DNA of 64,000 bases, taken from Ostrea edulis (lineage: Eukaryota). Below the pieces are notes generated by a model, which saw only the letters and a list, made by a program, of their open reading frames with translations, made no database searches and was not told the DNA's origin. Position numbers and translations under genes: made by a program. This document shows, one piece after another, positions 16,566 to 17,525 of the stretch; position 1 is the first letter of the stretch; the number at the start of each line of letters is the position of its first letter. The stretch spans positions 81,282,001 to 81,346,000 of the forward strand of contig NC_079170.1 of assembly GCF_947568905.1 (NCBI RefSeq), written 5' to 3'.

Positions 16566-17525
16566 TTATTATATACTTTCAATTTCATCTCTTCTCTTTC
16601 TTTAAAAGTTTGCGGGTATATATCACACGATATACGCCCGGAAACATTCCGGCCCGCAAACATTACGTCACAATCAATACACAAGCAAATTACTACGTCG
16701 TTAATTTTCAAATTTTTCATCTTTTACTCAGTTAAACCAATAAAGAATTGTTAAAATAAATTATTGTTAGTTTCTAAATGAAATTGAAAGTATATAATAA
16801 ATAGGTTATTGACTTTGTATGAGAAAACATGACGACCTCGTTTTTTGTCGCGGACGGATCGAGCTTACGCGCCAAAAAACTCGGTCGTCATATTTTCCCA
16901 TACAAAGTCTATAACCTTTTTATTATATACTTTCAATTTCATTTAGAAACTTACAATAATTTTATTTTAACAATTTCTTCATTGGTTTAACTGAGTAAAA
17001 GATGAAAAACACGAAAAATTTGAAAATTAACGGCGTAGTGTATTGATTGTGACGTAATGTTTGCGTGCCGGAATGTTTCCGGGCATATATCGTGTGATAT
17101 ATGCCCGCAAACTTTTAAAGAAAAAAGAAGAGATGAAATTGAAAGTATATAATAATTATAGGTTATAGACTTTGTATGGGAAAATATGACGACCGAGTTT
17201 TTTGGCGCGTAGACGGACCGAGCTTGCGAGGTCCGTTCGCGACAAAAAACGAGGTCGTCATATTTCCCATACAAAGTCTATAACCTCTTTATTATATACT
17301 TTCAATCTCATTTAGAAACTAACAATAATTTTTTCTTTAACAATAGCTTTATCGGTTTAACTGAGTAAAAGATGAAAAACACGAAACATTTGAAAATTAA
17401 CGGCGTAGAAACCGGATTGTGATGTAATGTTTGCGGGCCGGAATGTTTCCGGGCATATATCGTGTGATACATGCCCGCAAACTTTTAAAGAAAAAAGAAG
17501 AGATGAAATTGAAAGTATATAATAA
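16566..17525. mobile_element. Crypton-like non-autonomous foldback element with an A/B cassette array (A+ B+ A- B- A-)
   Basis: Three copies of cassette A (about 235 bp) and two of hairpin cassette B (about 120-130 bp), separated by 11-bp inverted arms around an 8-bp spacer. The Crypton label is inferred from site architecture. Confidence 0.65.

What the first reader, a model, noticed from the sequence alone, without database searches (positions are those of the whole stretch)
16566..17525. Shufflon-like cassette array: modules in both orientations between loxP/FRT-like 11+8+11 sites
Seen: the order is A+(16566-16800) B+(16801-16917) A-(16920-17155) B-(17158-17286) A-(17289-17525). Every internal junction is AAAGT(A/C)TATAA-spacer-TTAT(A/T)(G/T)ACTTT, with spacers TAAATAGG, CCTTTTTA, TAATTATAGG (10 nt) and CCTCTTTA. 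The asymmetric TAAANAGG spacer alternates direction, and the outer ends keep only half-sites. Established: inverted arms around an asymmetric 6-8 nt spacer is the tyrosine-recombinase site architecture, where inverted sites invert the intervening DNA and direct sites excise it; Crypton transposons encode tyrosine recombinases. Inference: a non-autonomous Crypton-type element that has undergone site-specific inversion of single cassettes and tandem re-integration, possibly still ongoing somatically. No recombinase gene is present in this window.
Basis: partly seen in the sequence, partly recalled or inferred. Interest (0 to 1): 0.75.

Follow-up and report, generated by a model that had tools for sequence, protein, structure and literature searches.

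The report
Nested copies of one oyster transposon
The "cassette array" is three copies of a single ~370-bp, roughly 1,000-copy oyster jumping element that inserted into each other's ends and then lost about 130 bp, so it is not a set of DNA segments being flipped by a recombinase.

Summary
The sequence is as described: A+ B A- B A- at 16566-17525, with every junction made of inverted 11-mers around an 8-10 nt spacer.

A and B are not independent cassettes. Genome-wide (an 895-Mb flat-oyster assembly) they are the two halves of one non-autonomous element, U. U is A (23-bp inverted ends), then AA, then B (a palindrome with ~58-bp arms), then a 7-nt tail, CCTATAA.
- 963 copies carry the canonical A-B junction.
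- B orientation relative to A is 191 canonical against about 9 flipped.

U inserts without target duplication, immediately 5' of D-TAT(T), with D-TAY 10 nt upstream. Its own ends recreate such sites, so copies land in one another.
- Five loci hold exact head-to-tail dimers, mostly of different subfamilies.
- Nine hold the TTATAGG^U junction, a copy inserted at the tail of an inverted resident.

The whole window array (16566-17532) sits at one point of a host repeat, H. That point is a hot spot: 30 H copies are filled and 249 are empty. Another locus (L092) holds an equivalent array at the same H site in which the two adjacent B palindromes are still separate.

U's architecture matches non-autonomous Helentron/HLE2 elements, but its target is not T^T and no autonomous partner could be checked.

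Shufflon/Crypton reading: not supported. "Tandem re-integration": supported.

The parts
16452..16565 (+). Left part of the host repeat H (~660 bp, at least 947 candidate copies); it ends at the insertion point ...CCCTATC^
   Evidence: 40 copies at 98-99% identity, all ending at 16565; 27 of 30 copies continue directly with ATATTTAC....
16566..16800 (+). A1: the A module of the first (forward) copy U1, with 23-bp inverted ends
   Evidence: full-length matches at 92-96% identity to dispersed copies; subfamily clade II in the tree.
16803..16917 (+). B1: the palindrome of U1 (short, 115 nt). A-type linkers flank it on both sides (AT on the left, TT on the right). Read as the fusion product of two adjacent B palindromes.
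   Evidence: I1: 100-nt arms, 90% complementary; read from A2 it scores as a 'flipped' B; L092 shows the unfused state.
16918..17155 (-). U2: second copy, inverted. A2 (16920-17155) plus the TT linker; its own B and tail were lost in the ~130-bp deletion.
   Evidence: A2 sits on a different tree branch from A1 and A3.
17156..17525 (-). U3: third copy, inverted and complete. Tail TTATAGG (17156-17162), B2 (17160-17286), A3 (17289-17525).
   Evidence: unit positions 1-372, 89.5% identity; the 17155/17156 junction equals the exact head-to-tail junction found at 5 loci; A3 is in clade I.
17526..17532 (+). CCTATAA: the 3' tail of U1, pushed away from B1 by the two inverted copies inserted between B core and tail
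   Evidence: the host repeat resumes exactly at 17533 (ATATTTAC...); canonical copies end ...CTATAACCTATAA.
17533..18077 (+). Right part of host repeat H, including a 149-bp palindromic MITE-like segment at 17916-18064
   Evidence: 80-88% identity to other H copies; contig depth returns to single-copy level at about 18087.

Best explanation
The block 16566-17532 is a pile-up of three copies of one non-autonomous mobile element, U (~355-385 bp, about 1,000 copies). U consists of a 5' inverted-repeat end, the A body with a GC-rich hairpin, the matching right repeat, an AA linker, a palindrome B with ~58-bp arms, and the 7-nt tail CCTATAA.

Shown:
- U integrates without target-site duplication, immediately 5' of D-T-A-T-(T), with a second D-T-A-Y 10 nt upstream.
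- One position in host repeat H is a hot spot.
- U's own termini mimic the target. The 5' end is TTATT, and the rc tail plus B start reads TTATAGG^TTATAG.

Inferred order of events:
1. U1 entered H in forward orientation.
2. U2 entered inverted, between U1's B core and its tail.
3. U3 entered at the same regenerated site, which produced an exact head-to-tail U3-U2 junction.
4. The two adjacent B palindromes (U1's and U2's) then collapsed into one by a ~130-bp deletion between their ~35-nt identical outer arms. This gives A> B <A <B <A plus the tail.

The '11+8+11 sites' are therefore the right repeat of A abutting the base of the B stem, or one copy's end abutting another's. They are cis-acting transposon ends, not inversion sites.

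The transposition chemistry is inferred only. Rolling-circle (Helitron-like group 2 / Helentron-type) is most likely, at about 45%, because the architecture fits: terminal repeat, right repeat, then a 3' stem-loop, with no duplication. Integration of a circular form by a recombinase is about 25%. A duplication-free cut-and-paste enzyme is about 10-15%.
For: One unit, not cassettes:
- 29/30 A-seeded loci have B next to A in the same arrangement (the 30th has it ~1.4 kb away on the canonical side), and 29/29 B-seeded loci hold a canonical unit or a truncated or internally replaced derivative.
- 963 canonical A-B junctions genome-wide, 0 in the control.
- B orientation: 191 canonical against about 9 flipped and about 6 hybrid.

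No duplication:
- Host repeat H reads CCCTATC|ATATTTAC when empty (249 sites) and CCCTATC|U...CCTATAA|ATATTTAC when filled (30 sites, all in one orientation; sequences).
- The same conclusion comes from L022 (tandem-repeat flank), L094 and L046.

Target logo:
- n=63 left and n=67 right flanks. T 75% at -9 and A 75% at -8. T 94%, A 94% and T 90% at +2 to +4. C is never seen at -10 or +1.

Recurrent independent hits:
- The seven H-site insertions in hand lie on at least 5 branches of the U tree.

Self-targeting:
- Exact head-to-tail junction at 5 loci. The two units of a dimer belong to different subfamilies in at least 3 of the 5 by the tree (window, L092, L094); L095's pair is 93.9% alike and L091's 99.1%.
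- TTATAGG^U junction, 9 exact.
- Tail followed by an inverted B core, 4 exact.

Intermediate:
- L092 (same H site, other chromosome) holds U1, then two inverted U between B core and tail, with both B palindromes still present (1113-nt insert against 967 in the window).

Cis elements and structure:
- The ends are the most conserved part (0.99 against 0.75-0.9 internally).
- Single-stranded fold -91 kcal/mol, z = -14.5.

Architecture against the literature: PMC4067079, PMC11417382, PMC7492417. The genome holds at least 74 Helitron Rep matches, many in open frames above 1,000 aa.
Against:
- The target is not the T^T that defines Helentron/HLE2 insertions: position -1 is any base and +1 is A, T or G.
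- The order of the three insertions and the B-B deletion are inferred from one intermediate-like locus, not observed.
- A heterodimer could in principle have been copied as a unit from a donor dimer.
- The sample of copies was chosen by best BLAST score, so frequencies from the 95 loci are biased towards young copies. The pattern counts are genome-wide but require near-exact matches.
Confidence: 0.8

Rival explanations
1. One reading: a shufflon-like array whose A and B cassettes are inverted or excised by a tyrosine recombinase acting at the 11+8+11 sites, possibly still active somatically, with the element being a non-autonomous Crypton.
For: The junctions do have the geometry of recombinase core sites, and the junction is conserved in 963 copies. 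Insertion leaves no duplication and is sequence-specific, which a recombinase could also produce. About 9 copies carry a flipped B core.
Against: A/B order and orientation are fixed in about 95% or more of copies. The flips keep the canonical linkers on both sides, so their breakpoints lie inside the palindrome arms (L014). The window arrangement is fully explained by whole-copy insertions plus one deletion, with an undeleted counterpart at L092. No recombinase-like ORF lies within 8 kb. Animal Cryptons lack terminal repeats (PMC3212892).
Confidence: 0.04
2. The array was made in a single event by the transposition machinery itself: rolling-circle read-through past the terminator plus strand switching at the B hairpin, giving a concatemer that was inserted as one piece.
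For: The block has one proper 5' end and one proper 3' tail and sits at a single point of H. Helitron-type elements are known to form tandem arrays (PMC7492417). The two units of the L091 dimer are 99.1% identical.
Against: A1, A2 and A3 fall in three different parts of the family tree and differ by 3-7% at aligned positions (8-15% counting gaps), as much as unrelated copies. At least 3 of 5 dimers are heterodimers by the tree. The inner copies are not 3'-truncated.
Confidence: 0.1
3. A single inserted copy was rearranged locally by the host's replication or repair: fold-back inverted duplication around the B palindrome, followed by tandem duplication of the B-A unit.
For: A1-B1-A2 is a 590-bp palindrome centred on B1 (I1, I2). 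B-A repeats with a 370-bp period (D1). L077 shows a single copy at the same H site.
Against: In-situ duplicates should be each other's closest relatives, but A1, A2 and A3 each have closer relatives elsewhere in the genome. The same two junction types recur at independent loci. L092 keeps both B palindromes with the tail between them, which fold-back synthesis would not produce.
Confidence: 0.05

Closest known systems
HINE / non-autonomous Helentron (Helitron-like element group 2), e.g. DINE-1 in Drosophila and Cg_HINE in Crassostrea gigas
   Same: Non-coding and high-copy. A short inverted repeat at the 5' end, repeated subterminally near the 3' end. A palindrome or stem-loop after the right repeat, followed by a short tail. 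No target-site duplication. AT-rich target. Occasional head-to-tail arrays.
   Different: The target is ^D-TAT(T) with a second TA 8-9 nt upstream, not T^T. The repeat is 23 bp and the palindrome has ~58-bp arms, against 5-10 bp in mites and short in oysters. The base of the palindrome repeats the terminal 11-mer. There is no central tandem repeat or microsatellite. No RepHel partner has been shown.
Crypton (tyrosine-recombinase DNA transposons)
   Same: No target duplication. Integration at short specific sequences. Non-autonomous derivatives exist. The joined ends form inverted arms around a spacer, as a recombinase core site would.
   Different: Cryptons, and animal ones in particular, have no terminal inverted or direct repeats (PMC3212892). 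No recombinase gene is linked. There is no crossover-sequence repeat flanking the copies.
Shufflons and other invertible multi-segment switches (e.g. R64 rci)
   Same: Segments in both orientations separated by short inverted sites.
   Different: Segment order and orientation are fixed across about 1,000 copies. No adjacent recombinase. The segments are non-coding. The arrangement arises from whole-element insertions.
Spy (PIF-like transposons that make no target duplication) and classical MITEs
   Same: Small, inverted ends, high copy number, precise insertion at a preferred motif without duplication (Spy; this comparison rests on my own recollection, not on a tool result).
   Different: The ends are asymmetric: 3 nt outside the repeat on the left, and 134 nt (palindrome plus tail) on the right. 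The target motif is different. Ordinary MITEs make duplications.

Membership tests
Shufflon / invertible cassette array | Segments occur in independent orientations among copies or alleles | tested here: not met
   58/59 sampled copies are canonical. Genome-wide, 191 canonical against about 9 flipped B cores. A is never inverted relative to the ends.
Shufflon / invertible cassette array | Dedicated site-specific recombinase encoded next to the array | tested here: not met
   Only two ORFs of at least 110 aa lie in 9-25 kb, and neither has a Pfam match.
Shufflon / invertible cassette array | Inversion alleles or excised circles present in reads | tested here: inconclusive
   The four runs are held only as short contigs. 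The repeats are about 1,000x deep and no contig spans the locus.
Crypton | No terminal inverted repeats (animal Cryptons have no terminal repeats at all) | tested here: not met
   A perfect 23-bp inverted repeat and a palindrome with 58-bp arms, against the description in PMC3212892.
Crypton | Autonomous relative encoding a tyrosine recombinase with the same termini | not tested
Crypton | Integration without target-site duplication | tested here: met
   Filled against empty H sites.
HLE2 / Helentron-derived HINE | No target-site duplication | tested here: met
   H site (249 empty, 30 filled), L022, L046 and L094.
HLE2 / Helentron-derived HINE | Short inverted repeat at the 5' end and subterminally at the 3' end | tested here: met
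   Unit positions 1-23 against 216-238, perfect in most copies.
HLE2 / Helentron-derived HINE | Stem-loop after the right repeat, close to the 3' terminus | tested here: met
   B occupies 241-365 of the 372-nt unit and ends 7 nt from the terminus. DNA fold z = -14.5.
HLE2 / Helentron-derived HINE | Insertion between T and T | tested here: not met
   Position -1 is A 30 / C 27 / G 11 / T 32 %. Position +1 is A 52 / T 36 / G 12 %. The conserved part is TAT at +2 to +4.
HLE2 / Helentron-derived HINE | Autonomous partner with Rep-helicase sharing both termini | not tested
   At least 74 Helitron_like_N matches exist in the genome, but their flanks could not be fetched.
MITE of a DDE cut-and-paste superfamily | Target-site duplication of fixed length flanking inverted ends | tested here: not met
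   No duplication at any of the empty-site comparisons.

The most novel reading that the evidence does not exclude
U represents an undescribed lineage of duplication-free, sequence-targeted DNA elements. Its joined ends (11-mer, ~10-nt spacer, 11-mer) would be the true recombination or nick site. It would integrate at D-TAY-N6-^D-TAT either through a recombinase acting on a circular copy or through a Rep nuclease with a specificity unlike the A^T and T^T of known Helitron groups. Arrays would then grow because each insertion regenerates its own target.
Probability: 0.2. Interest if true: 0.55.

Novelty: new variant of a known kind. Interest (0 to 1): 0.3.

Why it matters
For this finding, it removes a striking but wrong reading: there is no evidence of programmed or somatic DNA shuffling in an animal. 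For transposon biology, it documents an abundant oyster family of about 1,000 copies. The family has Helentron-like architecture but a different and unusually informative target (TAT at the cut, TA one helical turn upstream), a very large 3' palindrome, and an 11% occupied hot spot in another repeat. It also shows clear self-targeting that builds head-to-tail and nested inverted arrays from independent insertions. This is a simple route from dispersed elements to satellite-like or palindromic DNA in bivalve genomes. It also shows how such pile-ups can mimic recombinase cassette systems.

Tried and rejected
- Target duplication of ~10 bp: the left and right flanks both carry D-TAT, which at first looked like a degenerate duplication. 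The empty H sites and the L022 tandem-repeat flank show no duplication, so this is a two-part target motif.
- B as an independent MITE: all 29 best B matches are attached to A.
- Window and L092 arrays as copies of one ancestral array: positionally equivalent units fall in different subfamilies, so the two arrays are at least partly independent.
- Read evidence for inversion alleles: only short contigs were available. The joints reflect paralogous copies, for example 16565->17533, which is an empty H copy.
- Known RNA families: nothing reached a gathering score, only generic hairpin matches to plant miRNA models.
- Literature search for the terminal 15-mers: no paper holds them, and the Ostreidae satellitome paper has no supplement held as text.
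- Earlier notes of this scan: nothing on this element by sequence or words.

Full report
OBSERVATION. All four internal junctions consist of an 11-mer, an 8- or 10-nt spacer and the inverted 11-mer. First, A carries perfect 23-bp inverted ends (pairs I18-I22). Second, B is itself a near-perfect palindrome with arms of ~52-58 nt. The first 11 bases of the B arms (TTATAGACTTT) nearly equal the core of the A ends (TTATATACTTT). The 'sites' are therefore an A end abutting a B end.

A AND B ARE ONE ELEMENT. The assembly has 895 Mb in 52 contigs, ten of them chromosome-sized. Run labels and earlier notes of this scan point to a flat oyster.
- A has at least 1,184 candidate copies and B at least 1,153.
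- In 29 of 30 A-seeded loci, A is followed by AA, then B, then CCTATAA. The 30th has B ~1.4 kb away on the canonical side, apparently split off by another insertion.
- All 29 B-seeded loci have A attached in the same way.
- I call the ~355-385-bp unit U; its sizes cluster at 370 and 381 bp.
- The canonical 32-nt A-B junction occurs 963 times with up to 2 mismatches, against 0 for the reversed control.
- Patterns reaching from the A side into the asymmetric core of B give 191 canonical matches against 33 for the flipped version. Of those 33, about 9 are true flips. About 6 are hybrid arms. The rest are canonical copies with tail variants, read from the other side.
- In the one flipped copy read in full (L014), and in the flipped matches on the A side, the normal linkers are kept, so the breakpoints lie inside the palindrome arms. 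This is the ordinary behaviour of long palindromes. It is not exchange at the junction 'sites'.

HOW U INSERTS. The left flank of the window block (16452-16565) belongs to another repeat, H, with at least 947 candidates at 98-99% identity.
- In 27 of 30 H copies the sequence runs CCCTATC|ATATTTAC. In the window the whole block 16566-17532 lies exactly between these two halves. In L077 a single canonical U lies at the same point. There is neither duplication nor deletion.
- Three other comparisons agree: a 24-bp tandem repeat interrupted in phase (L022), a U inside the hairpin of an older U (L046), and a dimer inside a 149-bp palindromic repeat whose uninterrupted form is in the window at 17940-17960 (L094).
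- The flanks of 63 5' ends and 67 3' ends give a two-part target. At -10 to -7 it is D-T-A-Y (T 75%, A 75%). Immediately after the insertion point it is D-T-A-T-T (T 94%, A 94%, T 90%, T 63%). C never occurs at -10 or +1.
- Genome-wide, the H site is filled 30 times, always in the same orientation, and empty 249 times.
- The seven filled H sites in hand sit on at least five different branches of the tree of 64 A sequences. The site has therefore been hit repeatedly and independently.

WHY ARRAYS FORM. U begins TTATT, so its 5' boundary, together with the D-TAY already present in its left flank, is again a full target.
- The exact head-to-tail junction (tail directly followed by the 5' end) is found at five loci, against 0 in the control.
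- By the tree, the two units belong to different subfamilies in at least three of the five (the window, L092 and L094). L095's pair is 93.9% alike, though its truncated upstream unit is not in the tree. Only L091 is a near-identical pair, at 99.1%. These are therefore successive insertions rather than read-through copies of one template.
- On the opposite strand, the 3' end of any U reads TTATAGG^TTATAG..., again a near-target. The junction TTATAGG followed by a U 5' end occurs 9 times exactly. Its partner junction, tail followed by an inverted B core, occurs 4 times.

THE WINDOW ARRAY. Parsed with these rules, the block has five parts.
- U1 body: A1, the AT linker and B1.
- TT plus A2 (inverted).
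- A complete inverted U3 at 17156-17525: TTATAGG, B2, CT, A3.
- The displaced tail of U1 at 17526-17532.
- The junction 17155/17156 is the exact head-to-tail junction on the minus strand.
Locus L092 on another chromosome has the same H site occupied by U1 followed by two inverted copies inserted between B core and tail. There, both adjacent B palindromes are still present (insert 1113 nt against 967). The window differs by loss of one B core plus TTATAGG. That is a ~130-bp deletion between the ~35-nt identical outer arms of two neighbouring palindromes, which are direct repeats of each other in that configuration. A further B flanked by A-type linkers on both sides exists on contig C10. A1, A2 and A3 fall in three different parts of the family tree. 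This argues against in-situ duplication and against a one-step concatemer.

WHAT KIND OF ELEMENT.
- U is non-coding: there is no ORF, and the two ORFs of at least 110 aa within 8 kb have no Pfam match.
- It has no Rfam match above threshold.
- As single-stranded DNA it folds into two closed domains, an A stem and a B hairpin (-91 kcal/mol, z = -14.5).
- Its ends, the right repeat, the base of B and the tail are the best conserved parts (0.99 against 0.75-0.90).
- The layout matches the published description of non-autonomous Helentrons / Helitron-like group 2 (PMC4067079, PMC11417382 and, for oysters, PMC7492417). That layout is a terminal repeat, a right repeat, then a stem-loop near the 3' end, a short tail and no duplication.
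- One defining feature of that group, insertion between two Ts, is not met.
- The genome has at least 74 Helitron Rep-domain matches, many in long open frames.
- A recombinase acting on a circular copy remains possible. The joined ends form inverted 11-mers around ~10 nt, and the H hot spot (CCTATC^ATATT) resembles that junction (CCTATAA^TTATT).
- Crypton membership is not supported, because animal Cryptons lack terminal repeats (PMC3212892).

READS. Twenty public runs from ten studies hold the stretch, all as short assembled contigs. Laid on 15900-18300, four runs show single-copy depth up to about 16385 and again from about 18087. Between them depth is hundreds to thousands of times higher, and no contig spans the block. 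The joint 16565->17533 seen in one run is the empty form of H from paralogous copies. Locus-specific inversion alleles could therefore be neither shown nor excluded.

VERDICT. The shufflon, somatic-inversion and Crypton interpretation is not supported. What is there is a nested pile-up of a self-targeting, duplication-free, Helentron-like non-autonomous transposon inside a hot spot of another repeat, later trimmed by a palindrome-to-palindrome deletion. It is of moderate interest to transposon specialists for its target specificity, its self-targeting and its unidentified partner, and it is otherwise ordinary.

Noticed in passing
window 16452-16565 and 17533-18077: Host repeat H (~660 bp, at least 947 candidate copies). 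Its left 114 nt are 98-99% conserved among copies, while the right 545 nt are only 80-88% alike. One position in it is occupied by U in 30 of 279 countable copies.
   Followed up: partly
window 17916-18064: A 149-bp palindromic MITE-like repeat (ends TATTGCATGATAG...) inside H. A related copy elsewhere (L094) carries a U dimer at ATATGAAGAT^TTATTCACCC.
   Followed up: partly
window 15914-16273: A 53-bp minisatellite, 6.7 copies, 82% matches, just upstream of H.
   Followed up: no
window 18229-18487: Purine-rich tandem repeats with 41-, 80- and 121-bp periods (AGAGAAAGAAAG...), overlapping a 195-aa ORF that has no Pfam match.
   Followed up: no
window 15030-15303: A 126-bp tandem repeat, 2.2 copies, 96% identical.
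   Followed up: no
L048:1163-1632 (rc) and L053:1163-1632: A U variant in which unit positions 92-222 are replaced by 229 nt of unrelated sequence, while the 5' 91 nt, the last 13 nt of the right repeat, B and the tail are kept. The two loci share flanks, so they are duplicates. This hints at the minimal cis-acting parts, or at a relative of the partner element.
   Followed up: no
L014 (= L044), plus the genome places listed: About 9 U copies have the asymmetric core of B inverted between unchanged flanks, and about 6 have hybrid arms. This is consistent with recombination or conversion between the arms of the palindrome.
   Followed up: partly
L034:1800-1870: A ~70-bp palindromic insert sits inside the GC-rich hairpin of an A module, next to a nested U. 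The A hairpin CATATAT-CACACG-ATATATG is itself a preferred U target (also seen in L046).
   Followed up: partly
L092:75-1145: A local ~879-bp duplication carrying the H right part plus TTATAGG plus a U copy, next to the three-copy array.
   Followed up: no
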